From assembly GCA_964035545.1 (NCBI GenBank), contig OZ037770.1, forward strand, positions 2,946,662 to 3,010,661: 64,000 bases of DNA, in the 5' to 3' direction. Shown here piece by piece: positions 708-53,179 of this stretch. The stretch is from Bugula neritina (lineage: Eukaryota; Animalia; Bryozoa). The first letter of the stretch is position 1, and every line of letters begins with the position of its first letter. The notes below the pieces were generated by a model. The model had not been told where the DNA came from. It saw only the letters and a list, made by a program, of their open reading frames with translations, and ran no database searches. The translations under genes were made by a program, and so were the position numbers.

Positions 708-3700
708 ATGGAGAGCTATAGAGACATTGGGAAGTTGGATGAGTTGACAGAGAAATACCAGAATGAGGCAAGAGATTCAAAGGGTGACTGGGTACCTTAC
801 CTTAAGGTGTGTATAGGTGACTGATTAATTTACATACTTAATACTTGCTACTTGTGATAGGCATGTATAATGAATATAATGAATACTGTGGTATTGTATT
901 TAGGCTCATGGGTTGGCCAACAGATGTCTTGCCAGAGAATGGACCGCAGAAAGACAGCGTAAAGTCTATGATATAGAAGAAAGCTGGTACAAAGGTAGGC
1001 ATCCACTTACATATGAGGAACATGAGCAGCAAACAACCAAACACTTACAGCTACTCAGAGAGTACAGAGATGAAACTAAATATGACTTTAAATCTATTGA
1101 TACAAAGCACTTAAACCTTGACAGTTACCCTTCAAAGGATCAACTGTCTTTCTTTTCTGATACTGTATTTAAACTAAGTCAGAAATGTAGTAACCAATTG
1201 ATTTCAGTCTGTGCGTCCATTATGCAGTCAAGTGTTGATAATCTTAGTAAGTCAGGTTTGGAGGTTCCTTGTTCTTTTGCTGTGATTGCATTGGGTTCTG
1301 TTGCTCGTGGTACAGCCACTCCTTACTCTGACTTAGAATATGCCTTCATTGTGGAGTCTGACAGTCACATGGACTACTTTACTAAATTAGCTGTTGATAG
1401 TTACTTTAGGATAGGGAACATGGGGGAATCTCCCTTGAAAACCTTTGATATTACTGAGATAGACAAGTCCTACAATGATGATGTGACTGTTGGGTTTCAC
1501 ATTGATGGCATATCAAAGAAAGCAGGGAATATCCCTACTGGAAGGGGTGATGGTGCTAAGAACTTGATCTTGATGCCAGATCAGTTAACCTGTGTGTATA
1601 GGGAAGCGTTGTGTTCACCTGCTAGTGACACAGCAGATATTGGTGACATTCTCTCTTCTTCAGTGTTGGTTTATTCCCACAAAAGTGGTGATGCTCTTTT
1701 TGAAACGGTGAAAGAAAATTTTCATAAAATCTTAGCAGAAGAAAGCTCAAGCGCATTGCTAATAAAAAAGCGATTAGCAGTGTTGGGAAATGATGTGAAT
1801 ACGTATAACTTTCAACCTAGTTTTGAGTCTTTTGGGCCTCCAGACAACACCCAGCTTAAAGTAAAGTCTGAATTATTTCGCTACCCAACACTTTTAGTTG
1901 ATCATCTGCGACTGCTCTTAGCTTTCTCTGAAACAAAACCTAGGGCGGTAATTGAGAAACTGAAAGAGTGTGGGTTTATAGATGATGCACAATGTTTCAG
2001 ACTAAACTTAGTATCAGCTTTAGCGATATACATAAGGACAGCAGCTTGTATTCAGCTACAATCTCAACAAGATAAATTTTCACTGTATCCTGCAGCAAAA
2101 TCAAACAGAAAAGTTTACTGCTTATTGCCTGATATTTTCATCCTGATGATCTACACAATTATCCCCTTCAAATTATGTATTGCCAAAAATTTGGTTTCAC
2201 TAACTAGCTTTGACACAACAGATAAGGTTGATGTAATGAAGGGGTTAGTAAGCAATTTAAATGTGCAGAGTTCATCTTTTATGGTAAAAGCTGAAGCTGA
2301 GTATTTCTGTGGATCCTATGAACAGGCAATAAAAACTATTAAAACCAACTGTGGTGAAGGAATATTTGCTGAGAGACCGGATTCATTTGCAAAGACTGTA
2401 AAAAGAATTGTCAAGCAAAACAAATCAGAAACATCAAGGTTATTAAATAGTGGCTCAAAGGAAGTAAAAACTTCTCAGCAACTGGTTGAACTGGCAGCCT
2501 ATTTGTTATACTCTTCACAAAATTTCCAGCTTTCTTTAAAATATTTTACTTGGCTAGCGGAAAATTCTAAAGAAACTTCAATTGATGTGTTGAAGTGGAA
2601 GATTTTGGCCATAGATTGTGCTAACAAACTTCACAACTATACGAATGCATTTTCACTGCTTGGAGATGTTTATTCTACTCTAAAGACTCAGTTTAACATG
2701 AGTAGAGGAGAAACTCCGTTCAGGTTTGTACAAAAAATGTCTACAAGCTGGAAAATTCCAGATGAAGACAAGCGATGGTGTGAAATTACTGCACAAGCTT
2801 TCAGAGTCCTCAGTGAAGCATGTAAAAACACAAAAAACTACATACAAGCAGAGGAAATGGCTAATATTGCGCTCACAGTTTTTGACAGACTGCACTCAGT
2901 TGACAAACAGGAAAGACTTGATAGCCATTACATTGAGCTGATAGTATCATTAGCTTTAATACATTCAGAGAAAGGAGAGCATGAGAGAGGTATTCAGTAT
3001 CTGAATCACTACCTTGATGAGTTGATAAAGCTCCACACTGACTGTGTTGATCACCCAGATGTTGCAATACTACTGAGAGGGTTGGGACTAATCTATGAAA
3101 ATATTGAAGACTCTGAAATGTCCTTGCATTTCTATAGCAGAGCTTTGTCTATGACAGAGAACCTGCACACCACAACTCATCATGGCAGTGTTGCTCAGTG
3201 TTATAGAGATGTGGCAGCTCTGGAAGTCAAAAGGTCAAACTATGATGCAGCACTGAAGAATTATCAAACAGCTAGACACATATATGATAGCATAGAAGCA
3301 GGCAATCATGAAAAAGCTAGTCTACTGGTAGAAGTGGGACTCCTTTACAGTCTTATGGGGGATTATGACTCGGCCCTTTCAAGTCTCAAATCAGCTCTTC
3401 AGATTTCACAGGCTACAGCAGAGACCACCCACATAGACATTGCAGACATACACTCTGCTTATGGTAGAGTATATAGTGAGATGGGAAAGGAAAAGCTTGC
3501 ACTCAAAAATCATGCAATGGCTTTAGAAATGACTAAAAACATATTTAATGAGATAAAGGACATCCCAATACTGGCCCAACTTCATGGAGAAATGGGGAAG
3601 TTTTCTATAGACTTAGGTACTAAGGCTAGACAATTGAATATAGAAAGAGCTAGCAGAGAGGTAAAAAGTGTTCATCCTGATATAGCCTCATGTTATCTTC

Positions 3701-4701
3701 AAGTTGGTAGAGTGTATGAAGATATGTGTCTTTATGATCAGGCCCTGCTTTATATGAACAGGTCATGTGACATGTATATTGCTGTACGTGGGAAGACAAA
3801 TCATGTAGACTTAGCTACTGCTTATGGTGAGCTTGGTAGTGTGTATGACAGCATGGGTGAATATAGCAAGGCACTAGAATACCATACTAAGTCATTAGAT
3901 ATGAAGCTAGCTGTCTATGGCAGTGAGGCTACACATGCACACATTGCTACTTCATATAACAATATTGGTCTTGTGTATGACAGCATGGGTGAATATAGCA
4001 AGGCACTAGAATACCATACTAAGTCATTAGATATGAAGCTAGCTGTCTATGGCAGTGAGGCTACACATGCAGGCATTGCTATTTCATATAGCAATATTGG
4101 TAGTGTGTATGACAACATGGGTGAATATAGCAAGGCACTAGAATACCATACTAAGTCATTAGATATGAGGCTAGCTGTGTATGGCAGTGAGGCTACACAT
4201 GCACACATTGCTATTTCTTATAACAATATTGGTCTTGTGTATCACAACATGGGTGGATATAGCAAGGCACTAGAATACCATACTAAGTCATTAGATATGT
4301 ACATAGCTGTCTATGGCAGTGAGGCTACACATGCACACATTGCTACTTCATATAGCAATATTGGTATTGTGTATGACAGCATGGGTGAATATAGCAAGGC
4401 ACTAGAATACTATACTAAGTCATTAGATATGCGGCTAGCTGTCTATGGCAGTGAGGCTACACATGCACACATTGCTACTTCTTATAGCAATATTGGTATT
4501 GTGTATAACAACTTGGGTGAATATAGCAAGGCACTAGAATACTATACTAAGTCATTAGATATGAAGCTAGTGGTCTATGGCAGTGAGGCTACACATCCTC
4601 ACATTGCTAGTTCTTATAAAAACATCAGTATTGTATATAAGAAAATGGGTGAATATGGAAAAGCACAAGAGTACCAGCTGAAAGCAGATGCTATAAGCTG
4701 A
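708..4701 (+). CDS. Nucleotidyltransferase (Pol-beta superfamily, GlnD/DUF294-like) plus TPR-repeat protein, copy 1; join(708..806,904..4701), ~1298 aa
   Basis: ATG at 708; 33-codon exon ending AAG|gt; acceptor tag at 901-903 in frame with ORF 913..4701. Motif ALGSVARGTATPYSDLEY (GS-x10-DxE), then a helical segment resembling DUF294_C/GlnD (VKSELFRYP..IEKLKECGFID..LAIYIR), then TPRs. Confidence 0.85.
3853..4644 (+). repeat. Six near-identical 132-bp (44-aa) TPR repeats
   Basis: Unit MGEYSKALEYxTKSLDMxLAVYGSEATHAxIAxSYxNIGxVYxx starts at 3853, 3985, 4117, 4249, 4381 and 4513. Confidence 0.95.
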
Positions 4702-18702: not shown

Positions 18703-21062
18703 GGTTACACATATTATAGTGTAGCTATTACATGGTTACACATATTATAGTGTAGATATTACATGGTTACACATATTATAGTGTAGATATTACATGGTTA
18801 CACATATTATAGTGTAGATATTACATGGTTACACATATTATAGTGTAGCTATTACATGGTTACACATATTATAGTGTAGATATTACATGGTTACACATAT
18901 TATAGTGTAGATATTACATGGTTACACATATTATAGTGTAGATATTACATGGTTACACATATTATAGTGTAGATATTACATGGTTACACATATTATAGTG
19001 TAGCTATTACATGGTTACACATATTATAGTGTAGATATTACATGGTTACACATATTATAGTGTAGATATTACATGGTTACACATATTATAGTGTAGCTAT
19101 TACATGGTTACACATATTATAGTGTAGGTATTACATGGTTACACATATTATAGTGTAGCTATTACATGGTTACACATATTATAGTGTAGATATTACATGG
19201 TTACACATATTATAGTGTAGATATGACATGGTTACACATAATATAGTGTAATTATTACATGGTTACACATAATATAGTGTAGATATTACATGGTAACAGA
19301 TATTATAGTGTAGCTATTACATGGTTACACATAATATAGTGTAGCTATTACATGGTTACACATAATGTAGTGTAGCTATTACATGGTAACAGATGTTATA
19401 GTGTAGCTATTACATGGTTACACATGTTGTAGTGTAGATATTACATGGTTACACATGTATAATATAGTGTAGCTATTACATGGTTACACATAATGTAGTG
19501 TAGCTATTACATGGTAACAGATATTATAGTGTAGCTATTACATGGTTACACATATCATAGTGTAGTTATTACATGGTTACACATATTATAGTATAGGTAT
19601 TACATGGTTACACATATTATAGTGTAGCTATTACATGGTTACACATGTTGTAGTGTAGATGTTACATAGTTACATATTTTATAGTGTAATTATTACATGG
19701 TTACACATGTTATAGTGTAGATATTACATGGTTACACATCTTGTAGTGTAGTTATTACAGGGTTACACATATTATAGTGTAGATATTACATGGTTACATA
19801 TTTTATAGTGTAATTATTACATGGTTACACATATTATAGTGTAGTTATTACATGGTTACATATAATATGGTGTAGATATTACATGGTTACACATATTATA
19901 GTGTAGATATTACATGGTTACACATATTATAATGTAGCTATTGCATGGTTACACATATTATAGTGTAGATATTACATGGTTACACATGTTATAGTGTAGA
20001 TATTACATGGTTACACATCCCGTAGTGTAGTTATTACATGGTTACACATATTATAGTGTAGCTATTACATGGTTACACATATTATAGTTTGGTTATTACA
20101 TGGTTACACATATTATAGTGTAGATATTACATGGTAACAGATATTACAGTGTAGCTATTACATGGTTACACATAATATAGTGTATCTATTACATGGTTAC
20201 ACATAATATAGTGTAGCTATTACATGGTAACAGATATTATAGTGTAGCTATTACATGGTTACACATATTATAGTGTAGATATTACATGGTTACACATATT
20301 ATAGTGTATATATTACATGGTTACACATATTATAGTGTAGATAATACATGGTTACACATATTATAGTGTAGTTATTACATGGTTACACATATTATAGTGT
20401 AGATATTACATGGTTACACATGTTACAGTGTAGATATTACATGGTTACACATATTATAGTGTAGTTATTACATGGTTACACATATTATAGTGTAGATATT
20501 ACATGGTTACACATGTTACAGTGTAGATATTACATGGTTACACATATTATAGTGTAGTTATTACATAGTTACACATGTTACAGTGTAGATATTACATGGT
20601 TACACATATTATAGTGTAGTTATTACATGGTTACACATATTATAGTGTAGATATTACATGGTTACACATATTATAGTGTAGTTATTACATAGTTACACAT
20701 ATTATAGTGTAGATATTACATGGTTACACATATTATAGTGTAATTATTACATAGTTACACATATTATAGTGTAGATATTACATGGTTACACATATTATAG
20801 TGTAGTTATTACATAGTTACACATATTATAGTGTAGATATTACATGGTTACACATATTATAGTGTAATTATTACATAGTTACACATATTATAGTGTAGAT
20901 ATTACATGGTTACACATATTATAGTGTAATTATTACATGGTTACACATATTATAGTGTAGATATTACATGGTTACACATGTTACAGTGTAGATATTACAT
21001 GGTTACACATATTATAGTGTAGTTATTACATGGTTACACATACTATAGTGTAGTTATTACAT
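18703..21062. repeat. 31-bp satellite (catggttacacatattatagtgtagatatta), ~76 copies
   Basis: catgg at 18731 and 18762 and onward; starts 13 nt into the intron after REV1 exon 7. Confidence 0.97.
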
Positions 21063-31300: not shown

Positions 31301-34300
31301 TTATACTAAGATGAGTAAAGTATTTATCATGTTTATTGTATTTATTTTATTATCCTATTTACTAGTTTACTCAGTTGTCAACCAATTAAAATAAGTTTGG
31401 TGAATTTCAATCCAGTGAAGATGTTCGAAAATAATTTTAATGGACAAGTTATTTCATGTTTGAAAGAAAACATCTATAGAACTGATATTGACCTACTTTT
31501 TAACACCATTTTATGTCTTATTTGATGCTTATCAGTAAATATGAATATTAGAGTTGAGTTGAAGAGGACGTTACCATAAACAATTTTTGTTTTAAGATTT
31601 TGTGGTAAAAATGAACTCTCTTACATAACTTACCAGCGTTATTCAGAATTAAATTCACACACCTGTCAACACCTGTCAAAAATCTGTAATATGCATGTTT
31701 TTTGAACAGCTCTTCACTGATTGGTTTTTATTTTACCTAATATCAAATACAATACATTTCTATAGTTGTTTGACTAACAGCTTGCAATGTTATTTTAAAC
31801 AAAGCTAAACGCAAGCTTTTGCTGCTATTTCTAGGCCACACCACCCAAGTAGAAGACACCCATTTCTACCAAAGATTGCCTCTCGCAGCCTGGTGGTAAA
31901 AATAAACTCTCTTACATAATTTATCAGTGTTATTTGAAAGTCAATTCACACACCTGCCAACACTTGTCAAATCTCTGTAATATGCAGTATTTTTGTTCAA
32001 CAGCTTTTAGCTTACTGGTTTCTATTTAGCTTAATGTCACTCTCAACACAATTTTAGTTGTGATTTTAACAGACTGTACTAAATGCATAGTTTTGCTACT
32101 ATTTGTAGGTCACACCATCCAAGTAGAAGACACCTGCTAGCACCTGCCATACACCCATTTCTACAAAAGACTGCCTGTCACAGCCTCACCATACAAATAC
32201 CTGTCAAAGCAACACAACACACCTGCTATCACCTGTCACCCAGCCTCTCAACTGCCAATAAAAAGTCACTATTTATACTTTCTAAAAGTAAGTTTCTCTT
32301 TCTTAAAGTGAATATTTTGATACTACAAAGTTTAAGATGTATACAATTGTCACTAAAGTAATTTTGTTTTTAATAAGATATACATATCTGCTAGATTTGT
32401 AATTCTTTTTCTCAAATATTTTAATTATATTTATAGTCACTAAACCTAATTAATATTAGAATACTTTTCAATTACTTTGTAGTCTAAACATAATTACATT
32501 ATCTATTATTTAGACACTACCACATCAGAACCCACCTGCTAGCACCTGTCACAAGTTACTCACTGCTTACAATAACTGCACATCTTCAGTTACGTAAAGG
32601 TAAGGTAAATATTGTAAAAGTAAAGTTATTATCTAAGAATAATTTCTCAAAATAACATAATGCTTATGATTTTCATATTGAGGTGACTAAAGTATTTATC
32701 AGATATATTGCATATATTTAATTATATCTCACTAGTTTCCTAAGTTGTCAACCTATTTAAACATTAATTTTGCATTTTAATTTAGCGAAGATGTATGAAA
32801 GCACATTTAACTACTTTTATTATATTGGAAATCAGGTAATTCTTTTTACAAAAATGACGTCGAAAGAAAACAACCATTTGTCAATCTTTATTTTGCGAGG
32901 ATGTTTAAAAACCCTTCTAATGGACATCTTTTTTTTCACTTGCATCCTTCCCTTAGTGTTTTAAAAGCCAGTCAAGATTTTACCAAAAATATAATAAAAG
33001 AAAACATCTATATAACTAAATTTGACCTACTTTTTACCACCATTTTATGTCTCCTTTGATTCTTTAACAGTGAACATAAATATTAGAGTTGAGATGAAGT
33101 GGGCGTCACTAAAATTTGTTGTGATTTTAAACAGGCTAAATGTAAACTCTTGCTGCTATTTGTAGACCACACCACCCAAGCAGAAGACACCTGCTATCAC
33201 CTGCCATACACCCATTTCTGCAAAAGACTGCCTGTCACAGCCTCACCATACAAGCGCCCGTTGAAGCAACACAACGCACCTGCTATCGCCTGCCACAAAG
33301 TTGAGCCTCACTTAAACTAAGATAAACAATCCTCATCAACTACCTATAAGTAAGTTTCTCCCACGAGTGAAGTTTTTACCAACTAATAACAACATTTTAC
33401 AGAAGCTTTTTGACACCCATACAATATTTCTCTTCCCTGACATATAGTTTTTCTCAGTTGCTGCATCAGTATAAGAAGTTTAAATTAAATAGTGACTCTG
33501 TTAAAATATAGAATTGTTGCTTTAGGAAGGTGTATATGTCAAACACAATGTATTCCTGTTGCTCTATTTTTATGCAGCTCCAGTAAAAACCTAAAATATA
33601 TGTATGTATTTTTTATTAAAAAAATTAACTCATCAGAATGAAGATTACAGAAAGTCTTACATGTAACATTTGATTTAGAAGAACTATGCAGTGTTGCAGT
33701 TCTCTTGATTTTTACCAGTTTTACCGCAAGTTTGAGACCTTTCGTTATTTTTATATTCATAATTATGTAGAATATAAATGTGAGTTTGCTTTGTAGACAC
33801 TACCACAACAGAACCCACCTGCTATCACCTGTCACAAAGTCTACCACTGCATAAAACCAACACATGTCTTTAATTACCTAAAAGTAAGTTTTTTTTACAT
33901 TTGAAATATTATGTTTTTATTAGCTGACTAAAATTTCTACTTTCTTTACAGTCAATGTCCTTCATTATACTTTACTGGTTTATCTTTCCAGTGAGGAAAA
34001 TTTTGTAGAGCAGACTTTTACTTTCAGCTTTTTTTTCGTATTAAAATAATCACGAAGTGCAGTTTTTCTTTTGCATTTCTCATTCAACTAATAACTAAGT
34101 GCAGTTTCTATTCTATATTCCCCATTCACATAAGCAGTAGAGCATCCAGTTACATAATTTACTCTTTGAAGTTTACAAAGCTTTCTGTGGTTGTTATATT
34201 TAACCTTGATAGTAGACTGATAGTTGCTATGGTTACGACTACAAACACTTGTATATATGTAGACATTGTCAACAAGCTATTTGTTTCAGCAATTAAAATT

Positions 34301-35227
34301 ATGATTGGATGATATTTGTTGAGCAAATGTTTCCCTGAAATTAAACATTTCTACCTACTATCATATTATACTGCATGTGTTGAGTTTATACTGGTTAGGA
34401 AAATGTAGTCTTGAAAATATATGCAGTCCTCGAACTCATTTCTCTGATGAATATTTTATCAGTTTGAATTAACATATCCTTTGGTTGCTGGTGTTGCTAA
34501 TAATAATACTGTAGACTAACTGGTAGCTGCTATGAAAGTATGACCTTCTTGTTTGTTGAGTTAATTACCAAATCTTTACCTTGTTGGCATACTGATTTAT
34601 GAAATGTTTTGTGAAAATAAATTCATGTAATTCTACTGCTGCTTTTAGACACCACCCAACTAGAAGACACCTGTCAGCACCTGTCATCAGCGCATTACCA
34701 CCAAAGTCTGCCTGTCACAGCCTCACCATATATATATACAGGGCACTACAACACACCTGCTATCACCTGTCACAAAGTTGACTCTACCTCAGTTGACATA
34801 GACCACCCTCCTTTATTAATTTGAAGTAAGTTTCTGATTTTATTCTAATTTTAAAATTTCACAGCTTCGTCAATTGAATTTTGCAATTGCTTTGAAGCAA
34901 AAGAAATGAGAAAAACTTGAATGTAAAACTATTTTAACAGATTAATAAAATTGCAGCATTGACCGTTATTTAGTTTAAGTTTAGATAACTTCACATTGTG
35001 GTGCACATTTTGCTGCTATTTTATATTCTGGTAACCAGCTACGTTTTTATTACAAGTTACTTTTATAAGGAAAGCAATTGATTTATTTTTTAACCAAATT
35101 ATATGCAATTTCTCATAATCTAAACATTATTCTATTCTTTAGGCACTATCACAACAGAACCCACCTGCCCCCACCTGTCACAAAGTATATGACTGCCTGG
35201 CAAATAACACAGCTCTTCAATTATTCA
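28382..35227 (+). other. Array of ~14 paralogous, apparently non-coding exon-like modules with a paired CACCTG core
   Basis: Modules at 28382-28597, 29096-29205, 29502-29596, 29883-29964, 30403-30494, 30908-30983, 31145-31229, 31835-(truncated), 32109-32287, 32514-32599, 33166-33349, 33797-33883, 34649-34825, 35143-35227. Nearly all follow a T-rich tract plus YAG, and most end at GTAAG. Confidence 0.7.
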
Positions 35228-35496: not shown

Positions 35497-38400
35497 ATGG
35501 AGGGCTATAGAGACATTGGGAAGTTGGATGAATTGACAGAGAAATACCAGAATGAGGCAAGAGATTCAAAGGGCGACTGGGTGCCTTACCTTAAGGTATG
35601 TATAGGTGACTAATTAATGTACATACTTATTACTTGAGTCTCAAAATTGTTTGTGATGGGTATGTATAATGAATATAATGAATACTGTGGTATTGTATTT
35701 AGGCTCATGGGTTGGCCAACAGATGTCTTGCCAGAGAATGGACAGCAGAAAGACAGCGTAAAGTCTATGACATAGAGGATAGCTGGTACAAAGGTAGGCA
35801 TCCACTTACATATGAGGAACACAAACAACAAACAACCAAACACTTACAGCTACTCAGAGAGTACAGAGATGAAACTAAATATGACTTTGACTCTATTGAT
35901 ACAAAGCATTTAAACCTTGACAGTTACCCTTCAAAAGATCAACTGTCTTCCTTTTCTGATACTGTATTTAAACTAAGTCAGAAATGTAGTAACCTATTTA
36001 TTTCAGTCTGTGCGTCCATTATGCAGTCAAGTGTTGATAATCTTAGTAAATTAGGTTTGGAGGTTCCTTGTTCTTTTGCTGTGATTGCATTGGGTTCTGT
36101 TGCTCGTGGTACAGCCACTCCTTACTCTGACTTAGAATATGCCTTCATTGTGGAGTCTGACAGTCACATGGACTACTTCACTAAGTTAGCTGTTGATAGC
36201 TACTTTAGGATAGGAAACATGGGAGAATCTCCCTTGAAGTGCTTTGATATTACTGAAATAGACAAGTCCTACAATGACGATGTGACTGTTGGGTTTCACA
36301 TTGATGGCATATCGAAGAAAGCAGGGAATATCCCTACTGGAAGAGGTGATGGTGCTAAGAACTTGATCCTGATGCCAGATCAGTTAACCTGTGTGTATAG
36401 GGAAGCGTTGTGTTCACCTGCTGGTGACACAGCAGATATTGGTGACATTCTCTCTTCTTCAGTGTTGGTTTATTCCCACAAAAGTGGTGATGCTCTTTAT
36501 GAAACAGTGAAAGAAAGTTTTCATAAAATCTTAGCAGAAGAAAGCTCGAGCGCATTGCTAATAAAAAAGCGATTGGCAGTGTTGGAAAATGACGTGAATA
36601 CGTATAACTTCCAACCTAGTTTTGAGTCTTTCGGGCCTCCAGACAACACCCAGCTGAAAGTGAAGTCCGAATTATTTCGATACCCAACACTTTTGGTTGA
36701 TCATCTCCGAATGCTGTTAGGTTTCCCTGAAACAAAACCTTGGTTGGTAAATGAGAAACTGAAAGAATGTGGGTATATAGATGAAACACAATGTTTCAGA
36801 CTAAACCTAGTATCAGCTTTAGCTATATACATAAGGACAGCAGCTTGTATTCAGCTACAATCTCAGCAAGATAAATTTTCACTGTATCCTGCAGTAAAAT
36901 CAAACAGAAAAGTTTATTGCTTATCACCTGATATTTTCATCCTGATGATCTACACAATTGCCCCTTTCAAATTATGTATTGCCAAAAATTTAGTTCCATT
37001 AACTAGTCTTGACACAACAGATAAGGTTGATGTAATGAAGCGTTTAGTAAGCAATTTAAATATGCAGAGTCCATCTTTTATGGTAAAAGCTGAAGCTGAG
37101 TATTTCTGTGGATCCTATAAACAGGCAATAAAAACATTTAAAACCAACTGTGGTGAAGGAGTATTTGCTGAGAGACCTGATTCATTTGCAACACTTGTAA
37201 AAAAAACATCAGAAACATCAAGATTGTTGAGTAGTGGCTCAAAGGAAGTAAAAACTTCTCATCAACTCGTCGAACTGGCAGCCTATTTGTTATATTCTTC
37301 ACAAAATTTCCAGTTTTCTTTAAAATATTTTACTTGGCTAGCAGAAAATTCTAAAGAAACTCCAATTGATGTGTTGAAGTGGAAGATTTTGGCCACAGAT
37401 TGTGCTAACAAACTTCACAGCTATACTGATGCATTTTCACTGCTTGGAGATGTTTACTCTACTCTAAAGACCAAGTTTAACATGAGTAAAGGGCAAACTC
37501 TGTTCAGGTTTGTACAAAAGATGTCTACAAACTGGAAAATTCCAGATGAAGACCAGCGATGGTTTGAAATCACTGCACAAGCTTTCAGAATCCTCAGTGA
37601 AGCATGTAAAAACACAAAAAACTACATACAAGCAGAGGAAATGGCTAATGCTGCCGTCACAGTTTTTGACAGACTGCACTCAGAAGACAAACAGGAAAGA
37701 CTTGATTGCCATTACATTGAGCTGATAGTATCATTAGCTTTAATATATTCAAAGAAAGGAAAGCATGAGACAGGTATACAGTACCTGAATCACTACCTTG
37801 ATGAGTTGATAAAGCTGCACACTGACTGTGTTGATCACCCAGATGTCGCAATACTACTGAGAGGGTTGGGACTAATTTATGAAAATATTGAAGACTATGA
37901 AATGTCTTTGCATTTCTATAGCAGAGCTTTGTATATGACAGAGAACCTGTACACCACAACTGATCATGGCAGTGTTGCTCAGTGTTATAGAGATGTGGCA
38001 GCTCTGGAAGTCAAAAGGTCAAACTATGATGCAGCACTGAAGAATTATCAGACAGCTAGACACATATATGATACTGTAGAGGCAGGCAATCATGAAAAAG
38101 CTAGTCTACTAGTAGAGGTGGGATTCCTTCACAGTCTTATGGGAGATTATGACTCAGCCCTTTCAAGTCTCAGCTCAGCTCTTAAGATTTCACAGGCTAC
38201 AGCAGAGACCACCCACATAGACATTGCAGACATACACTCTGCTTATGGTAGAGTATATAGTGAGATGGGAATGGAAGAGCTTGCACTCAAATATCATGCA
38301 ATGGCTTTAGAAATAACCAAAAACATATTTAATGAGATTAAGGACATCCCAATACTGGCCCAACTTCATGGAGAAATGGGGAAGTTTTCTATAGACTTAG

Positions 38401-40637
38401 GTACTAAGGCTAAACAATTGAATATAGAGAGAGCTAGTAGAGAGGTACAAGGTGCTCATCCTGATATAGCCTCATGTTATCTCCAAGTTGGTAGAGTGTA
38501 TCGAGATATGTGTCTTTATGATCAGGCCCTGCTTTATATGAACAGGTCATGTGACATGTATAGTGCTGTACATGGGAAGAAAAATCATGTAGACTTAGCT
38601 AGTGCTTATGGTGAGCTTGGTACTGTGTATTACAGGATGGGTGAATATAGCAAGGCACTAGAATACTATACTAAGTCATTAGATATGAAGCTAGCTGTCT
38701 ATGGCAGTGAGGCTACACATGCAAGCATTGCTACTTCATATAGCAATATTGGTCTTGTGTATAAGAGCATGGGTGAATATAGCAAGGCACTAGAATACCA
38801 TACTAAGTCACTAGATATGGAGCTAGCTATCTATGGCAGTGAGGCTACACATGCAGACGTTGCTACTTCATATAGCAATATTGGTCTTGTGTATCACAAC
38901 ATGGGTGAATATAGCAAGGCACTAGAATACTCTACTAAGTCATTAGATATGCAGCTAGCTATCTATGGCAGTGAGGCTACACATGCAGACGTTGCTACTT
39001 CATATAGCAATATTGGTCTTGTGTATGACAACCTGGGTGAATATAGCAAGGCACTAGAATACTCTACTAAGTCATTAGATATGCAGCTAGCTGTCTATGG
39101 CAGTGAGGCTACACATGCAAGCATTGCTACTTCTTATAGCAATATTGGTAGTGTGTATGACAGCATGGGTGAATATAGCAAGGCGCTAGAATACTATACT
39201 AAGTCATTAGATATGCAGCTAGCTGTCTATGGCAGTGAGGCTACACATGCAGAAATTGCTACTTCATATAACAATATTGGTAGTGTGTATTACAACATGG
39301 GTGAATATAGCAAGGCACTAGAATACTATACTAAGTCATTAGATATGGATCTAGCTGTCTATGGCAGTGAGGCTACACATTCACACATTGCTACTTCATA
39401 TAGCAATATTGGTAGTGTGTATTACAACATGGGTGAATATAGCAAGGCACTAGAATACTCTACTAAGTCATTAGATATGAGGCTAGCTGTCTATGGCAGT
39501 GAGGCTACACATGCAAGCATTGCTACTTCTTATAGCAATATTGGTAGTGTGTATTACAACATGGGTGAATATAGGAAGGCACTAGAATACTTTACTAAGT
39601 CAATAGATATGAAGCTAGCTATCTATGGCAGTGAGGCTACACATTCAAGTATTGCTACTTCTTATAACAATATTGGTCTTGTGTATAACAACATGGGTGA
39701 ATATAGCAAGGCACTAGAATACTATACTAAGTCATTAGATATGCAGCTAGCTATCTATGGCAGTGAGGCTACACATGCAGACATTGCTTGTAGCTATAGC
39801 AACATAGCCTCAGTTCACCACAAACTCTCAGACTACACCTCATCACTCAATCTCTATACTAAAAGTATAGCCATGTATAAATCAGTCTATGGTGAAGGAA
39901 CCAACCACAATGCTATAGCTGCTAGTTATATAGGTATTGCTGATGTGTACAGAGATACAGGTGAATATGCAAAGTCACTACATTATCTCACCTTGTCTCT
40001 AGACATGACTAAAGCTATACATGGTGACAATACCACTCACATAGCTATAGCATACACCAACCATAGACTGGGTAGACTGTATCATAACACAGGTCAATAT
40101 ACACACTCAGTACACTGCTATAACATGGCCCTGGTACAGATAGATAGGTGTAATACTGCTCATCTCCCTCTATATACAACTGTGTTAGTCAGACTCTCTC
40201 AGACTATGATCTCATTGTCAGACTACAAACACGCTAAGGGTCTCCTACTACTCGCTCTCAAACATTCACCTACTGACTACTGTAAGGATACTCAAGCTAA
40301 AATCTGTCAACTCTTAGGACAGTGTTGTCTCCACTTACATCAGTACAGGAAGTGTTGGAAATATTTATATTCAGCTCTCTGTTACTATGAGTCACTTCCT
40401 TCCTCCAACTGGAAGATGAAATCTTTAGCTCAGGTTCATTTGTACATCTCCTACTTGTGCTTGCATCTGGGTCATGTTTCACAGGCTATAGAACATTCAG
40501 GGCTAGCCTTAGTTCTTGTAGAGGTCCTCTCAGTTGACAAGGAGAATGTAACTCCTGAAATTACTAAACTGTATACAGACATTGCACACATGACTCTTGG
40601 TTTATATTCCACTCTCACTCTGTATGTTGATGTGTAA
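35497..40637 (+). CDS. Nucleotidyltransferase (GlnD/DUF294-like) plus TPR-repeat protein, copy 2; join(35497..35595,35703..40637), ~1677 aa
   Basis: Same exon structure as copy 1; GSVARGTATPYSDLE intact; uninterrupted ORF with 9 conserved TPR units and a divergent TPR tail. Confidence 0.88.
38637..39824 (+). repeat. Nine near-identical 132-bp (44-aa) TPR repeats
   Basis: Same consensus as 3853..4644; 132-bp period from 38637. Confidence 0.95.
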
Positions 40638-41864
40638 ACTTACAGTTTCCTTGACTTCTCCTGCCCTAAAATCTTAGGTCAGTGTATATAGTATACCTCA
40701 ACTTTGAAGGGCTTTTGTGTTGAAAATGCGTCTTTTTGAACAATTTTGACTGCTTTTTTATTTTCATATCTTGTATATCATATTTATACTTTCTATAAAA
40801 TATTGTATTGTTTATTTTTTTTTGTGTTTCCATTGCACCATCCTAATTTCTTATGCAATTTATATATATTCTTTATATTCTTGAATATTATACTGATGAC
40901 ATATAAATGCTTTTGTAATTTATGTTATTTTAGTTTCTGCTCATATATACAATAAATATTATATTGTGTATTTAAATTTATGTGTTGTGTGTACCAAGAA
41001 AATAAACCTGATGTATATTATAGAAATTGAATAAGTATAATTTGACACCTTAAAATAACTTCAAATTGAAAACATTAATAAAAAATTAAAAGATGGAGTT
41101 ATCCTCCTCTAACGGAGAAAACTAAATGCAGCAAATAAAATATTTATTTAACAGACTACTAGAAATATAAAAAGTTAGTAAATTATTTAGAGTTTTCACA
41201 GCATATTCTTGAAATGATTAGACTGTGAAATGCTTTGCTATTGAAACAATGCATATTAGGAGAACCAGTTGCATAGTATTTGCTTTAGAAAAAAACATAT
41301 CTAAGTAATATTTTAAATTAGCACCAGATATATAAATAATGAAATTCATTATAAAAACCATAATAATGCTGCAACTTTCCATAAACAGCAGTCTCTTCTA
41401 CTGGAGTTGTCGTTCTTTAAAAGCAGAGTCTATTTCCTGTTTCAGCCATTCATGCATAGTGACAGGGGGATACTGAGAGCGCCCCACTAGACATTCTATT
41501 AGTGTAGTCTGGTCTGGAATAGCAAAGAATGGGTTAGAAACTCTGTCAGCCTCCTGCAGGTGCATGTCATCTGACACCAACACTCGGTGCTTCTGAAAAA
41601 CATAAACAGTTCTCAGGGAACAAAGAGAATAGTTCCTGAATATACTGCATTCTACAAATTTTAAGTCAAACTTGACTTTCTTCAATCAGAGGTTTTCTAT
41701 AAAACAGAACAAAGCACAGCATGAACCACATTCACAGCAGAAATATTATGTTTATCACATAGACAAGGTTACCAGTAGAGTAGCTCTTTAATTGTGTTCA
41801 ATAAAATATGCAACCAGCAACATAACATGGTAGAGCTTGCTTGCTGTGTCTCTTGTAACTAGCC

Positions 41865-42310
41865 ACTAGTTAGTGTGACATCACTAGTTAGTGTGGCATC
41901 ACTAGTTAGTGTGACATCACTAGTTAGTGTGACATCACTAGTTGGTATGACATCACTAGTTAGTGTGACATCACTAGTTAGTGTGACATCACTAGTTAGT
42001 ATTACATCACTAATTAGTATGACATCACTAGTTAGTGTTTCATCTCTAGTTAGTATGACATCACTAGTTAGTGTGACATCACTAATTAGTGTGACATCAC
42101 CAGTTAGTGTGACATCACTAGTTAGTATGACATCACTAATTAGTATGACATCACTAATTAGTGTGACATCACTAGTTAGTGTGACATCACTAGTCAGTGT
42201 GATATCACTAGTTAGTATGACATCACTAGTTAGTATGAAATCACTAGTTAGTGTGACATCACTGGTTAGTATGACATCACTAGTTAGTGTGACATCACTA
42301 GTTAGTATGG
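41865..42310. repeat. 18-bp minisatellite, ~25 copies
   Basis: Paralog of 8217..8868. Confidence 0.95.
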
Positions 42311-46678: not shown

Positions 46679-47220
46679 TGTAATGGATTCTCATCCTCTA
46701 TTGTTCTGAAATAACTGCGTGCATCAGTATACTATAAATACTGTTGCTGTAATTATAGTTAAGTAAGCTAGCTTGCTAATGCCTAAGTATGGTGATTACT
46801 GTTAAGCTTTCAGCATAATGTAATTTTACTGAAATACGCATTCTGAAGTTATGTAATATTTCTTTTACTAATGTTGCTTTCTTTTGTGTGTGTCCTTTGT
46901 TGCTGAGATCGGCATTTCGGTCTTCCGAAATGCCGATATGCCGAAAATCGGCGTTTCGGCATTTCGGAGTCCCGAAATGCCGATATTCGGCGTTTCGGAA
47001 CCCCGATCTCGGCAACAAAGGAATGTCTTTGTCTCGCTTGTATATAAAAGCCAGCGAGTTCCAGTGTAGTTCAGACTACTACTGGAGCTCGCTGGTAGTA
47101 GGACCATTTAAGCTGTATTTGATGCTAATAAAGTTATCTTCATTCGTATTCAGATACTTGGCTTATTTTCTCTAGAGCATGTAGGCACTAGTTGCATTCA
47201 AAACCCACAAGTTTACTACA
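46679..47220 (+). repeat. 5' LTR (542 bp, TG...CA)
   Basis: tgtaatggattctc...tttactaca; TATATAAA at 47041, AATAAA at ~47127. Confidence 0.95.
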
Positions 47221-47221
47221 T

Positions 47222-47240
47222 TGGTGGCAGCGGTGGGATT
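47222..47240 (+). promoter_or_regulatory. Primer binding site, tRNA-Leu type
   Basis: TGGTGGCAGCGGTGGGATT is complementary to the metazoan tRNA-Leu 3' end AATCCCACCGCTGCCA-CCA. Confidence 0.8.
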
Positions 47241-47270
47241 TTCGAATAACTAGTTGCCGAGCGGCACGCA

Positions 47271-48176
47271 ATGGCCCCAGGGGACACAGCCCCTGAGGCA
47301 GCAACACCACCAGCCCTCACTGTGGAGGCGCTGGTCACAGCCCTCCAGGGATTGCGGGGGCAAGGACAGGCATCACCTGGTGACAGGTATCGCCTCCAGC
47401 CCCCGAATTTCGGAGGAGAAGAAGACGTAGAGCAATTCATCAGGGAGTTCCAAGATGTGGCCACCATCGCTGAATGGCCAGTACGGGTGCGCATCCTCCA
47501 ACTTCGGGCCTGTCTGACAGGCCGGGCCAAGAGCTTCGCTCTTGGGCCTGATGAAGAGCACATCATGCGGGCTCTCAGAGCCCGGTTCGGCCTAACAGCC
47601 GAAGAAGCAGCTGATCGTTTGCAGATCATGAGGAGGGACCGGAGGACTCCCCTGGAAGACCACGCAAACGAGGTAGAGCGCCTGGCTCAGGCTGCTTTCG
47701 GTCACGCCACTGGCAATGACCGGAAGCGCCTCGTTTACAACGCGTTCTTCCGGAGCGTGAATCACCCGGACCTGCAGCGATACTGGCTGGCCGCCAAGGT
47801 CAACAGTATAGAGGAAGCGCTGGAAATGGGGAAGGCTTACTTCCAGGTGGAAGAGCCTAGGCGACCGAGCTATACAGCCCGCCAAGTGGTCGAGGAGCAT
47901 GAGGAGACCACCCCACTTCCAACTCCACAGGTAGCAGCAGCTGCAACTAAATCACCCGAGCAGACGCAGCTCACCATGTTAATGGACATGATGAAAGGCC
48001 TGCAGGCTACGGTGACGAAGTTGCAGAACGAACAGGCGGATAGGCGGGCTCCCCGTTCACGGGACAACCCTGTCCGCCCATCTCTGCTAACCTGTTGGGG
48101 GTGCGGGGCGCAAGGGCACGTGAGGAGGCACTGCCCTAGAGGCCAAGGGCCTTTAAACACCCAAGGCTCACGGTAA
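47271..48176 (+). CDS. gag: Gypsy Gag with CCHC zinc knuckle, 301 aa
   Basis: PPNFGGEEDVEQFIREF..W..LRACLTGRA; CWGCGAQGHVRRHC. Confidence 0.92.
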   Translation: MAPGDTAPEAATPPALTVEALVTALQGLRGQGQASPGDRYRLQPPNFGGEEDVEQFIREFQDVATIAEWPVRVRILQLRACLTGRAKSFALGPDEEHIMRALRARFGLTAEEAADRLQIMRRDRRTPLEDHANEVERLAQAAFGHATGNDRKRLVYNAFFRSVNHPDLQRYWLAAKVNSIEEALEMGKAYFQVEEPRRPSYTARQVVEEHEETTPLPTPQVAAAATKSPEQTQLTMLMDMMKGLQATVTKLQNEQADRRAPRSRDNPVRPSLLTCWGCGAQGHVRRHCPRGQGPLNTQGSR

Positions 48177-51100
48177 CTTCCGCCAACCGTGAGCCTCACG
48201 CCAATCCCATCCGGGATAAGGCTCGGAGAGGAGAAGAAGAGACCTCCACAGGGTCTGCCGATACCGAGTGGCAGAGGCCACGGAGATCTCGGAGACCGCA
48301 AGGTCTACCCAATCCTCCGGCCATGTCACTCGAGACCCGGATGCAGCTAGAAGAAGCAGGATGGCAGGCACCTCGGAGATCTCGGAGACCGCAAGGTCCA
48401 CCCGATCCTCCGGCCTGGCCACTCCAGAACCGGTTCGCGGGGTTGCCCGAGGAGGTTGTGGAGGAGGATTCAGCTTACTCGCAAGAGTACCCCAAGCTAC
48501 CCTCCGACCTCAGAAAACCCCCGTTGTCTCTAAGACGAAGAGGAGGCCCGCTGTGCGGACTCAAGTTGTGTCTCCCCCAGAGACTGACCGCTCCAGGAGC
48601 ACCCAGCCGTATGGAAGCAGCTACTTCCTGCCCGGAAAGATTTCGGGTAAAGCTGCCACATTCCTACTGGATACTGGGTGCACTACCAACCTGCTGAGTA
48701 GGCGTCTCTTTGACACTCTTGGTGCACGAGAGCGGGCGAGCCTCGAGCCGTATGAAGGTGCGCATGGTACGTTGGCGGACGGATCATGCATTCCTTTCTA
48801 CGGCGTCATTTCACTACCTGGACGCGTCCGTGATCAAGCAATGCACGAGACGTTCATAGTCAGCCAGCTGAAGGAGGACGCCATCCTGGGAATGCCGTTT
48901 CTGGAGAAACACCAGTGTCACATGGATTTCCAGAAGTCAGTGGTGGTGATGGCTGGGAAGGAACTTGTCTGCGTCGACAAGTTCGGAAGGCCCTTGGTGG
49001 GCGGAGTCCAGGTAGTGCGGGACTGCACGGTTCCGGGGAGATCCCAGGCGACTCTTCGCTGCAGAGTCAACTGCAAGGAGATCGCCGGCCTGGGGGTGGT
49101 TGAGGGAACACACGGAGCGATCCGACTAGCAAACAGCCTGAATCGGCTAGATTGTCGGCAGGAGCTCCTCGTGCAGTGCATTAACCCCTTCACGGAACCT
49201 GTCCGATTATCGGCTGGAGCGCTGGTGGGGAAGTACTACTCCATCCAGGAAGCGGATGTGGGTCCGGCACTGGAGACAGTGGCCGACACCCAGGGGAACC
49301 CCCCTCACACCAGACGAGGAGCAGTCCCGGAGCATATGGCTGACCTGTATGATGGAGCTTGTGGAAACTGTACAAGTAGTACTGAACGCCAAGTACTGGC
49401 TCAACTACTTGCGGAGTACAGTGATGTCTTCAGTCGTGGCGATGGAGACATGGGGCTGACCAAGGTCATCTCCCACGAGATACCCCTGGCAGCCGGCACC
49501 ACTCCCATCAGGCAGCCTACTCGGCGTCTAGGCCCGGAGAAGGAGAAGGAGGTGAGCCGACAGGTACAGGATCTTCTCGACCGGGATCTGATTGAGCCTG
49601 CCCACGGTGCGTGGAGCTCTCCAGTAGTCCTGGTCAAGAAGAAAGATGGTAGCTGGAGATTCTGCGTGGACTACCGCAGACTCAACAGCGTTACCATCCA
49701 GGACGCCTACCCTCTCCCACGGATAGATGAGTCTCTGGATGCCCTCGCGGGTAGCAAGTACTTCAGTACTTTGGATCTGCTTAGCGGGTACTGGCAAGTA
49801 CCCCTCAGTCCTGATGCCCAGGACAAAGCAGCATTCATCAGCCGCGACGGGCTTTGGAAGTGGAAAGTACTGCCATTTGGATTAACGTCCGCTCCGGCAA
49901 CTTTCCAACGGCTCATGGAGCAGGTCCTCAGTGGGTTACACTGGAAGACCCTCCTCATCTATCTGGACGACGTCATTGTCATCTCCCCAGACTTCTCGAC
50001 TCATGTCAGTCGTCTGCGGGAGGTCTTTGACCGTCTCCGGGCAGCTGGACTGAAGCTGAAGCCCTCCAAGTGTGCACTCCTGCAGCCGGAAGTCACGTAC
50101 CTTGGCCATGTGGTTGGCCGTGATGGGGTCGCTACCGACCCAGAGAAGGTACAGGCTGTGAAGGAGTGGACTGTCCCCCGTGACCTCCCTGAGTTGCGCG
50201 CGTTCCTGGGCCTAGTAGGGTACTACCGGCAGTACATACCTGGCTTCGCAGGAGTGGCTCAGCCGTTAAATCGGCTGACCGCAAAGGGGGTCCTGTGGCA
50301 GTGGACACAGGAGGAGCAGCAGGCAAGAAGGAGGGCCGACGACCTAGCGAGGAACAGCAGCGGCAGGGAGACGTTGAGTTCCAACTCCTCTGTCGTCGCT
50401 GGGACGCCCTCAAGGTCAGTCCTGATGGCCTCCTGATGATAACGTTAGCAGCAGACAACCGTCAGCAGGAGAGGGACCGCGTCGTCTGTCCACGCGCCCT
50501 CCGACGGGAACTGATCTGGGACACCCATAAGCAGGCTCACTCTGGAGTCAGTCGGGTCATCAGGTGTCTGCGGCTGCGTTGGTATTGGCCCGGAATGACT
50601 CGGGACGTACGACTGCGGGTACGGCAATGCGAGGTCTGCCAAGCTAGCAAGCATGGCCGCCCCACGGAAACCACTGGTCGACGCCGGCTATACGCTGGTC
50701 GACCGTGGCAAGTAGTGGCGGTGGACCTCGTCGGGCCTATGCCGTTATCCGCCAGAGGGAACACCTGGATACTGGTGCTCACGGACCACTTTACCCGGTG
50801 GGCAGATGCTCTGGCTATTCCAGATGCAACAGCCCCCACGGTGGCCCGTACCCTGGACCAACATGTGTTCTGTTACCTCGGTTTACCCGAGCAGATACAT
50901 ACGGACCAGGTGCCCAGTTCCAGTCCCAGCTCATGGGAGACCTCTGCCGGATATGGGGGGTGAACCAGAGTCGGACCACCCCATATCACCCGCAAGGGAA
51001 CGGAGTCGTCGAGCGGAACAACAGGATGTTGGGTGACGCCCTCAGGAGCCTGCTCCTTGGCCGAGGTCAGGAAGAATGGGACGTGGTGCTGCCGCAAATC

Positions 51101-52399
51101 ATGCGGGCTTACCGCAGCACACCACACTCCGCCACGCAGGAGACCCCAAACTTCTTGATGCTAGGCCGAGAGACGCGGGTTCCGGAACACCTGACATACC
51201 ATGTTCCTGCCCCCGAGTCACCGGTACACGAATATGTGGAGGGTCTGATAGACATCATGGGCAAAGCTCATGATGCACTGCGTACCCAGCAGTGGCAGAC
51301 CCGCACAGAGGACTCGGAGGAGCCCCCGTTGTACCAGGTGGGAGACTGGGTCTGGATGGTGAGCTATCGTAGGCGACGCGGACAGTCGGCTAAGCTTCAG
51401 CCCAAGTTCGTCAGTCCCTACTGCGTGGTAGAGGTGCTGCCAAACCATACATACCGTGTGGAGCACTCTGGACAGGTCTCAGTCCAGAGCGAGCAGCGCC
51501 TGAAGCCGTACCAGGCCAGCCCAGACGCGGTGGGTCAAGCCCCACCCCTCCTGAAGCCCCACCGCCAGCCCAGCCGTCGAGGACAGGCCACCCGCCCTCG
51601 AGAGGTGGAAATTGTGTTCCCCAGAGAGGCGGACCAGAAGCAAACCACCCTGTTGGAGCAGCTGGAGCGACAACAGAGAGAGGAGCGGGAACAAGAACGA
51701 CAGCAAGCCCTAGGACCACCACCCCTCCAGGGGGAGGACACTCCCACCCGTGTTACGGGTGAAGGCGGGGACCCCCCTTCAGCGGTAGCTGAGGAGCCAC
51801 CGGCACCAGCAGCGCCTATACAGCAGGAACGGAGTCAGAGGGCTAGAAGGCCCCCCAGATATCTGGCGGACTACCACGTGGGACACATGGAGATGTCCCC
51901 ACAGAGGAGTGGTACACCCAGTACGGGTAAAAACTCCGAGCCTCAGTTGCAGAACAGCCCTGGCAGTACCGGACTTCTCCAAAAGCAATTACCCCCAGAC
52001 AAGCACAGTCACCTGGACAACAGGTACCCAGCTCTTTCGGGTAATGTTGGCCGAGGTAGGTGGCGATACCCCATACCTATGACTGACTTGGACCCCCCTC
52101 CAGAAGAAGAAGATGAGGCCACGACCCTACTACGCGCCCAGCTGATTGGAGATGGCGCTACCGCAGCCACCACCCAGCCTCTACGGGTAGCGCTGACAAG
52201 ACTGGGCAAGGAGCCTGGAGCACCAGGCAGCCAGATAGAAGAGAAGACCCAGCCGACCCACTCACAATTGCCCCGTCACGGGCAGAGTATGGCACTTCCT
52301 TACCGAGAGTGCGTCCTAGATAGTGCAATCCAGGCCTGGTCCGGTACCCTTGACCGTTGTACAGAAGGGATAGAAAGCCTGGTGCACCACCTCAAATAA
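48155..52399 (+). pseudogene. pol: Gypsy pol (protease, RT, integrase), RNase H deleted, frameshifted
   Basis: FLLDTGC protease; WRFCVDYR, PFGL, YLDD RT; abrupt junction at ~50323 after WTQEEQQA; HHCC zinc finger and VDLVGP/HTDQ/VVERNN integrase with a 1-nt frameshift at ~50909. Confidence 0.92.
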
Positions 52400-52611
52400 C
52401 TGAACCGGACAATTGGGAGCCGCCAGCATTGGCCACCCGGACTGTATATATTACGGGTACTACTATCGTTTATATTATTGTGATACGTGTGACTAATCAT
52501 AATACTTTCTGTTAATCGCATATTTTTCTACTTTTGTGTTTTTTTTTTTTGTTTTCTTTTTGTTTTGTGTGAAATCATTGTCCTGTTATCGAAAAGGGGA
52601 TGCTTTTCGAT

Positions 52612-52621
52612 GGGGGGAGAA
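52612..52621 (+). other. Polypurine tract
   Basis: ggggggagaa immediately before the 3' LTR. Confidence 0.85.
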
Positions 52622-53179
52622 TATAATGGATTCTCATCCTCTATTGTTCTGAAATAACTGCGTGCATCAGTATACTATAAATACTGTTGCGTATCGTTCT
52701 TAATGCTGTAATTATAGTTAAGTAAGCTAGCTTGCTAATGCCTAAGTATGGTGATTACTGTTAAGCTTTCAGCATAATGTAATTTTACTGAAATACGCAT
52801 TCTGAAGTTATGTAATATTTCTTTTACTAATGTTGCTTTCTTTTGTGTGTGTCCTTTGTTGCTGAGATCGGCATTTCGGTCTTCCGAAATGCCGATATGC
52901 CGAAAATCGGCGTTTCGGCATTTCGGAGTCCCGAAATGCCGATATTCGGCAGTTCGGAACCCCGATCTCGGCAACAAAGGAATGTCTTTGTCTCGCTTGT
53001 ATATAAAAGCCAGCGAGTTCCAGTGTAGTTCAGACTACTACTGGAGCTCGCTGGTAGTAGGACCATTTAAGCTGTATTTGATGCTAATAAAGTTATCTTC
53101 ATTCGTATTCAGATACTTGGCTTATTCTCTCTAGAGCATGTAGGCACTAGTTGCATTCAAAACCCACAAGTTTACTACA
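52622..53179 (+). repeat. 3' LTR (558 bp, TA...CA)
   Basis: By eye, differs from the 5' LTR by about 4 substitutions and a 16-bp indel. Confidence 0.95.

What the first reader, a model, noticed from the sequence alone, without database searches (positions are those of the whole stretch)
38637..39824. Repeat-variable residues: near-identical TPR DNA with change focused on a few codons
Across the 15 units of both copies, synonymous changes are rare (mainly tca/tct). Most variation falls at unit positions 11 (H/Y/S/F), 18 (K/R/Y/E/Q/D), 30 (H/G/S/D/E), 33 (T/I/S/C), 36 (N/S/K), 40 (L/S/I), 43 (D/H/N/K/Y) and 44 (S/N/K), mostly at codon positions 1-2. The spacings 30/33/36/40/43-44 and 11/18 follow helical periodicity, so these residues should lie on one face, probably the concave TPR groove. 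The two paralogs use different combinations (Q/E/D at 18 only in copy 2). Inference: concerted evolution plus diversifying selection producing a combinatorial binding code, loosely analogous to TALE/PPR codes.
Basis: partly seen in the sequence, partly recalled or inferred. Interest (0 to 1): 0.8.

Follow-up and report, generated by a model that had tools for sequence, protein, structure and literature searches.

The report
Shuffled TPR groove on bryozoan enzyme
A moss-animal gene joins a protein-tagging-type enzyme to nine near-identical TPR repeats whose binding-groove residues change several times faster than silent sites and are drawn from a pool shared with neighbouring genes; fungal immune receptors evolve this way, and nothing shows a TALE-like one-repeat-one-letter code.

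Summary
Window 38637-39824 is nine 132-bp (44-aa) TPR units in a spliced ~1677-aa gene of a bryozoan (probably Bugula-type). Its N-terminal domain folds like Legionella DrrA / E. coli GlnE nucleotidyltransferases (Z 26/21); the genome holds about 65 related matches. By register, six sites are canonical TPR groove positions (2, 5, 9, 12, 13, 33-equivalent). Unit 18 matches a KLC1 ligand contact, and the N/S toggle at 36 matches the KLC1/KLC2 specificity switch; site 11 is not canonical. Units of five clustered paralogues form one pool (Fst about 0), so combinations are not paralogue-specific; all 38 units differ and linkage is lost within about 10 bp. This is the known high-internal-conservation regime of fungal NLR repeats, here on a protein with no STAND NTPase. 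Likeliest role: defensive recognise-and-nucleotidylate (untested). A TALE/PPR-like code and somatic shuffling are unsupported. The scan noted this family and pattern before on other DNA of this genome.

The parts
38637..39824 (+). High-identity array: nine 132-bp units, each a 44-aa extended (KLC-like) TPR; unit 9 is a diverged terminal unit
   Evidence: AF2 model shows two helices per unit, unit positions 4-22 and 29-44, pLDDT about 90
35497..35595 (+). First coding exon (ATG, 33 codons)
   Evidence: RNA-type contigs join 35593/5 to 35701/3 across GT..AG; in frame; similar to the N-terminus of Watersipora P0008
35703..40637 (+). Main coding exon of copy 2 (whole protein about 1677 aa): nucleotidyltransferase, helical/diverged TPR region, high-identity array, long diverged TPR tail
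35748..37019 (+). DrrA/GlnE-like nucleotidyltransferase with C-terminal helical bundle
   Evidence: AF2 pLDDT 85.6; VIA-align DrrA 6yx5 Z 25.9, GlnE 1v4a Z 21.3, 3k7d Z 20.4; Pfam DUF294 E 2e-5
36093..36137 (+). Catalytic-type motif G-S-x10-D-x-E
   Evidence: motif found in 29 of 30 paralogue loci scanned; G, S and D invariant in the 39-sequence alignment
39825..40637 (+). Long C-terminal tail of diverged TPRs, present in copy 2 and the next paralogue; copy 1 ends with a short cap instead
33800..35227 (+). Short non-coding 5' exons spliced into the gene (approximate; the first extends left of the stretch laid)
   Evidence: joints 33883-34649, 34825-35144, 35227-35487/90 in RNA-type contigs; introns uncovered in three RNA-type runs but covered in run X1
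904..4701 (+). Main coding exon of paralogue copy 1 (ATG exon at 708); six 132-bp units at 3853-4644

Best explanation
The array is the variable binding surface of a germline-diversified sensor-enzyme. SHOWN (by computation): the units are 44-aa TPRs kept alike by exchange within and between clustered paralogues. About eight codons, mostly facing the concave groove, are held diverse with amino-acid change about 5 times the silent rate. Unit number differs among paralogues (5-15), and variants at different codons are close to freely assorted, so every unit is a new combination. The same polypeptide carries a conserved DrrA/GlnE-fold nucleotidyltransferase under purifying selection. INFERRED: the superhelical groove binds an extended peptide, with the invariant Asn at TPR position 6 holding the backbone and the variable positions reading side chains across neighbouring repeats. 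Binding either delivers the target to the enzyme or switches the enzyme on, and the enzyme transfers a nucleotide monophosphate (probably AMP) to a protein. The selective driver is most likely parasites or pathogens (intracellular innate defence). The surface works as a composite, antibody-like patch rather than a per-repeat code.
For: Site model M2a vs M1a: omega 9-12 at codons 11, 18, 30, 36, 40, 43, 44 in the window genes, and independently in three other paralogues (2dL 45.7 and 78.2). Tree-free hold-out: piN at the 8 codons 0.365, other 36 codons 0.025, piS 0.071, ratio 5.1 (bootstrap 2.7-12.4); 0 of 400 neutral free-recombination simulations reach it, even with doubled theta. Short-read contigs assembled independently show the same direction, more weakly (piN 0.33-0.36 vs piS 0.12-0.22). 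The same positions top the variability in Watersipora homologues. Fst -0.008, p 0.60; four gametes in about 80% of site pairs more than 10 bp apart. Register to consensus TPR with PMC1261162 and PMC6214655. Fold match and motif; unique region pN/pS about 0.3. About 65 matches in clusters; spliced and transcribed at family level. Precedent: PMC4986451, PMC13449251.
Against: No ligand, no enzyme assay, no expression response to infection. The second metal ligand is Glu (DxE), whereas DrrA has G-x11-D-x-D. There is no NACHT/NB-ARC switch, so the activation step has no direct model. Positions 2, 5, 9, 12, 13 are the most variable in TPRs generally, so position alone says little. In the older array on contig C4 the ratio is only 1.2 (0.7-1.8). 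The M2a test is my own script and is inflated by recombination. Loss of linkage could partly be recurrent mutation, or assembly polishing among near-identical units.
Confidence: 0.55

Rival explanations
1. Allorecognition: the arrays read polymorphic self proteins when colonies or cells of this colonial animal meet or fuse, as HET-D/E WD40 arrays do in Podospora, and the enzyme triggers rejection.
For: The evolutionary regime matches het-d/het-e (PMC13449251); bryozoans are listed among colonial animals with allo-incompatibility (PMC8195603).
Against: The spliced protein begins with a soluble-looking N-terminus and no Pfam membrane domain was hit (no signal-peptide predictor was run), so it would need cytoplasmic mixing. 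About 65 dispersed copies is unlike a single histocompatibility locus.
Confidence: 0.15
2. Internal conflict or host-substrate adaptor: the groove tracks fast-evolving endogenous partners (transposon proteins, germline proteins), in the way PRDM9 or KRAB zinc-finger arrays evolve.
For: The same signature of homogenised DNA with selected contact residues is known for PRDM9 (own knowledge). TPRs select substrate for the AMPylase FICD (PMC12409994). The region is rich in repeats and holds a young LTR element.
Against: No nucleic-acid-binding feature was found; closest solved folds are peptide-binding TPRs.
Confidence: 0.1
3. No positive selection: surface positions are merely unconstrained or hypermutable, and recent homogenisation keeps silent sites low.
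For: These positions vary in all TPRs (PMC1261162); piS at the eight codons is raised to 0.139; the older C4 array gives ratio 1.2.
Against: Relaxation caps piN at piS, but the observed value is 5-8 times higher in hold-out data, and above the silent divergence of the genes' unique parts (0.08-0.145). No CpG in the consensus unit and transversions outnumber transitions 22:14. Non-coding 31-bp satellites in the same window have mean diversity 0.05-0.06.
Confidence: 0.07
4. A true modular code (TALE/PPR/PUF-like): each repeat reads one base or residue of a linear polymer through a fixed residue dictionary.
For: Near-identical scaffold with few variable residues; near-binary toggles at 11 (Y/H), 36 (N/S) and 44 (N/S); the N/S toggle matches a proven specificity switch in KLC.
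Against: Eight or more variable sites on two helices, 9-10 residues at positions 18 and 40, and no 8-residue word recurs in 38 units. In solved KLC complexes one ligand residue is contacted by residues from two or three repeats.
Confidence: 0.05
5. The mosaic and cross-gene mixing are partly an assembly artefact (reads mis-assigned among near-identical units during polishing); the variable-site pattern is real but the shuffling is overstated.
Against: All seven arrays read are in frame; all 38 units are distinct; independently assembled contigs and the Watersipora genome show the same sites and 44-aa spacing.
Confidence: 0.08

Closest known systems
Fungal NLRs with high-internal-conservation repeats (Podospora HET-D/E/R WD40; NB-ARC-TPR such as Pa_2_10340, PaPnt1) - PMC4986451, PMC13449251
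   Same: Near-identical repeats, a few hypervariable positions under positive selection on the concave TPR face (modelled there on KLC2), variable repeat number, repeat exchange between genes, N-terminal enzymatic effector.
   Different: No NACHT/NB-ARC domain here; the effector is a DrrA/GlnE-like nucleotidyltransferase; unit is 44 aa; host is an animal; about eight variable sites rather than 3-4.
Kinesin light chain TPR (42-aa extended repeats) - PMC6214655
   Same: Extended helices, Asn ladder at TPR positions 5/6, ligand contacts at positions 2, 5, 6, 9, 12, 13, 17 and 31 by numbering; N/S at position 5 switches specificity about 37-fold in KLC2.
   Different: KLC repeats are old, divergent and conserved, six per protein, with no enzyme.
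Legionella DrrA/SidM and E. coli GlnE adenylyltransferase
   Same: Fold of the N-terminal 430 residues (Z 25.9 and 21.3) and the G-x11-D-x-[DE] motif.
   Different: Only 10-16% identity; Glu at the second acid; fused to a TPR array; encoded by an intron-containing animal gene; activity untested.
Neochlamydia NEX2 family (F-box/OTU-DUF294-TPR) - PMC4209131
   Same: Expanded family joining a DUF294 nucleotidyltransferase to C-terminal TPRs.
   Different: Bacterial symbiont effectors with ubiquitin-pathway domains; no F-box here; relationship not tested phylogenetically.
Ectocarpus NB-ARC-TPR and ROCO genes - PMC3341825
   Same: TPR units under diversifying selection and shuffled, proposed as defence receptors.
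   Different: There each repeat is its own exon; here the whole array lies in one exon.
TALE / PPR / PUF repeat codes; PRDM9 zinc-finger array (own knowledge)
   Same: Near-identical helical repeats differing at few residues; PRDM9 shares concerted evolution with selected contact residues.
   Different: Those read nucleic acid one unit at a time with a small recurring dictionary; no such dictionary or ligand is evident here.

Membership tests
TPR superfamily | Helix-turn-helix repeat with W4/L7/G8/Y11/G15/Y17/A20/Y24/A27-type consensus | tested here: met
   Pfam TPR_12 E 1e-130; ungapped 31-residue match to consensus TPR with a 10-residue insert; AF2 helices
High-internal-conservation (HIC) repeat arrays | About 85% internal identity over 100 aa or more | tested here: met
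   Pairwise aa identity 0.845 and to consensus 0.895 over 8 units; nt 0.92. T-REKS itself was not run.
High-internal-conservation (HIC) repeat arrays | A few positions under diversifying selection | tested here: met
High-internal-conservation (HIC) repeat arrays | Selected positions on the concave face | tested here: inconclusive
   Six of eight match canonical groove positions by register, one more by KLC1 precedent, one (TPR 24) does not; no coordinates measured
High-internal-conservation (HIC) repeat arrays | Repeat exchange between genes | tested here: met
   Fst about 0 across five paralogues; repeats closer at silent sites than unique parts; single assembly, artefact not excluded
High-internal-conservation (HIC) repeat arrays | Repeat-number polymorphism between individuals at one locus | not testable with these tools
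NLR / STAND receptors | Central NACHT or NB-ARC NTPase | tested here: not met
   No P-loop family in the Pfam scan of either protein
DrrA/GlnE-type protein nucleotidyltransferases | Pol-beta NTase fold plus C-terminal helical bundle | tested here: met
DrrA/GlnE-type protein nucleotidyltransferases | G-x11-D-x-D motif | tested here: inconclusive
   G-x11-D-x-E, conserved in 29 of 30 paralogue loci
DrrA/GlnE-type protein nucleotidyltransferases | Transfers NMP to a protein substrate | not testable with these tools
   needs an assay
TALE/PPR-type code proteins | Small recurring dictionary at 2-3 residues per repeat | tested here: not met
   38 distinct words in 38 units; up to 10 residues per site
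TALE/PPR-type code proteins | One repeat reads one unit of a nucleic-acid ligand | not testable with these tools
   ligand unknown

The most novel reading that the evidence does not exclude
An undescribed animal immune repertoire: dozens of single-chain sensor-AMPylases whose peptide-reading grooves are rebuilt by codon-scale gene conversion from a pool shared between genes (possibly also in somatic cells), with partly predictable per-repeat specificity. This would be a natural, programmable protein-tagging enzyme.
Probability: 0.12. Interest if true: 0.9.

Novelty: new variant of a known kind. Interest (0 to 1): 0.55.

Why it matters
It extends the 'homogenise the scaffold, diversify the groove' strategy, worked out in fungal NLRs, to an animal gene family that has no NLR switch and carries an enzyme type that, in the reviews I read, is described from bacteria. 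It gives a testable handle on recognition in bryozoans, for which I found no described recognition molecules in the papers searched. It also offers a natural library of 44-aa TPRs whose variable positions coincide with proven specificity switches of kinesin light chain, which is useful for binder design. The evolutionary mechanism itself is not new.

Tried and rejected
Pernigo 2013 (KLC2-SKIP) was not held, so a remembered cargo contact at TPR position 24 is unverified and not used. Literature searches for DUF294/nucleotidyltransferase-TPR genes in animals or bryozoans found nothing specific; the library lacks most subscription papers. Rejected: CpG hypermutation; paralogue-specific combinations; NLR membership; a two-haplotype false duplication as the source of the two copies (five copies in the cluster, pS 0.08-0.145, different insertions). 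The hhalign of P0032 is partly circular because P0032 is in the alignment.

Full report
What is there. The window is part of a 216-Mb eukaryotic assembly. Named homologues are from the bryozoans Watersipora subatra and Bugula neritina, so the host is a bryozoan, probably Bugula-type; the species is not shown. The window holds two copies of a duplicated segment of about 35 kb, each starting with a long gene. In copy 2 the coding sequence is a 33-codon exon (35497-35595), a GT..AG intron and one large exon (35703-40637), about 1677 aa in all. Contigs of three probable RNA runs cover the exons and not the introns, at 90% likeness, so transcription is shown for the family, not strictly for this copy. 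The finding is a 132-bp tandem array in that exon: nine units here, six in copy 1.

The observation. All eight variable codons and the residue sets are as written; they carry 70-75% of amino-acid differences. Across the 13 non-terminal units pS is 0.044 and pN 0.082; including the two diverged terminal units the overall ratio falls to 1.03, and several listed residues occur only in those terminal units. Codon 21 (V/I), and less so 19, 29 and 31, also vary.

Is it selection? The genome has about 65 matches to the N-terminal domain; five lie in this cluster, and I could read seven arrays. A codon site model (own implementation of M1a/M2a) gives a class with omega 9-12 and picks 11, 18, 30, 36, 40, 43, 44 in the window genes and again, with 21 and 33, in the three other cluster genes. 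Recombination inflates that test, so I rely on a tree-free one: in the hold-out genes piN is 0.365 at the eight codons, 0.025 elsewhere, and piS is 0.071 (ratio 5.1, bootstrap 2.7-12.4). With those codons neutral and freely recombining, 0 of 400 simulations reached the observed piN at either of two theta values; the ratio itself was reached in 1.5% at the lower theta. piN at these codons also exceeds the silent divergence of the unique parts of the same genes (0.08-0.145). CpG decay does not explain it. The signal weakens in older arrays (3.6 on C2, 1.2 on C4), where silent sites have caught up while piN stays near 0.35. Three independently assembled short-read contigs give piN 0.33-0.36 against piS 0.12-0.22, and the same positions lead the variability in Watersipora proteins.

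How the units evolve. Units are no more alike within a gene than between the five cluster genes (Fst -0.008, p 0.60; copy 1 vs copy 2 p 0.25). Silent distance between repeats of different genes (0.03-0.08) is below that of their unique parts, which points to exchange between genes after duplication; slower silent change in the repeats is the alternative. Variant sites more than about 10 bp apart show all four gametes in about 80% of pairs with r2 0.03-0.05, and all 38 units have a different eight-residue word. This fits short conversion tracts, but recurrent mutation at selected sites, or polishing artefacts in a single assembly, could contribute; I could not lay reads on the array.

Where the residues sit. 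Each unit is a TPR with a 10-residue insert. AlphaFold gives two extended helices per unit, positions 4-22 (helix B) and 29-44 (helix A), at pLDDT about 90. In standard numbering, unit positions 33, 36, 40, 43, 44 are TPR 2, 5, 9, 12, 13, and 30 is two residues before position 1 (the 33 equivalent). PMC1261162 lists 2, 5, 9, 12, 13, 33, 34 as the concave specificity positions. The Asn at position 6 is invariant in 38 units. Unit 18 is TPR 31 on helix B; by the 42-residue spacing of KLC1 this is R327, which contacts the TorsinA peptide. The N/S toggle at unit 36 matches KLC1 N343 / KLC2 S328, where Ser-to-Asn raises JIP1 binding about 37-fold (PMC6214655; the mapping is my inference from residue numbers). 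Unit 11 is TPR 24, normally a framework aromatic; it lies between positions 17 and 31 on the same helix-B stripe and may floor the groove or tune helix packing, which is not shown.

The enzyme. The first 430 residues fold like DrrA (Z 25.9, 325 aligned, rmsd 4.4) and both GlnE domains (Z 21.3, 20.4), far above the next unrelated hits. The motif G-S-x10-D-x-E is kept in 29 of 30 paralogue loci; DrrA has D-x-D. The unique region is under purifying selection (pN/pS about 0.3). There is no NACHT or NB-ARC domain. A distant relative lies on a gene-dense, bacterial-looking contig, and DUF294-TPR families are expanded in Neochlamydia; origin was not tested.

Mechanism. Shown by computation: homogenised scaffold, diversified positions, shared unit pool, conserved enzyme fold. 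Inferred: the groove binds extended peptides, each gene and unit order giving a different composite surface, and binding directs or activates nucleotidylation of a protein, most likely in defence (0.55). Allorecognition (0.15) and internal conflict (0.10) remain open. A TALE/PPR-like code (0.05) is unlikely, since the alphabet is wide, no word recurs and KLC structures show ligand residues shared between repeats.

Comparison and novelty. The regime is that of fungal high-internal-conservation repeats: PMC4986451 reports near-identical TPRs with positively selected sites on the concave face and repeat-number polymorphism; PMC13449251 reports TPR exchange between genes and HIC NLRs in animals too. 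This protein works like those sensors but is not an NLR. I found no paper on this enzyme-TPR family in animals. Verdict: real, well supported as diversifying selection, a new variant of a known kind; interest 0.55. Earlier notes of this scan reached a similar reading on other copies; they are not independent support, and their mention of an amphioxus relative was not checked.

Noticed in passing
window 6356-7021: An orphan copy of the long C-terminal TPR tail (94% aa identity to copy 2's tail) lies 1.7 kb behind the stop of copy 1, cut off from its reading frame; the cluster has short-cap (3 genes) and long-tail (2 genes) forms.
   Followed up: partly
window 46681-53179: Gypsy-type LTR retrotransposon with LTRs of about 550 bp at 96.6% identity, present only in the second segment copy; gag open, pol in three frames. 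Described only.
   Followed up: no
window 33800-35227 (and further left): Several short non-coding, mutually similar CACCTG-rich exons are spliced into the 5' end of the gene; also noted by the first stage (s1-451148).
   Followed up: partly
window 8227-8870, 18703-21062, 41864-42306, 59057-60138: 18-bp and 31-bp minisatellites duplicated with the segment and differing in copy number (36 vs 25; 76 vs 35); their long ORFs are repeat artefacts.
   Followed up: partly
unit codon 34 in all five cluster genes: The only common silent polymorphism (TCA/TCT, 19:19) sits between variable codons 33 and 36, as expected from hitchhiking in short conversion tracts.
   Followed up: partly
L067:5001-8891 (P0032): Distant nucleotidyltransferase-TPR relative (26% identity, E 1e-5) on a gene-dense metagenome contig next to another large TPR gene; looks bacterial.
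   Followed up: partly
P0012 (Watersipora subatra): Annotated protein appears to fuse two tandem copies (TPRs, then a second nucleotidyltransferase-TPR), suggesting a tandem cluster there too.
   Followed up: no
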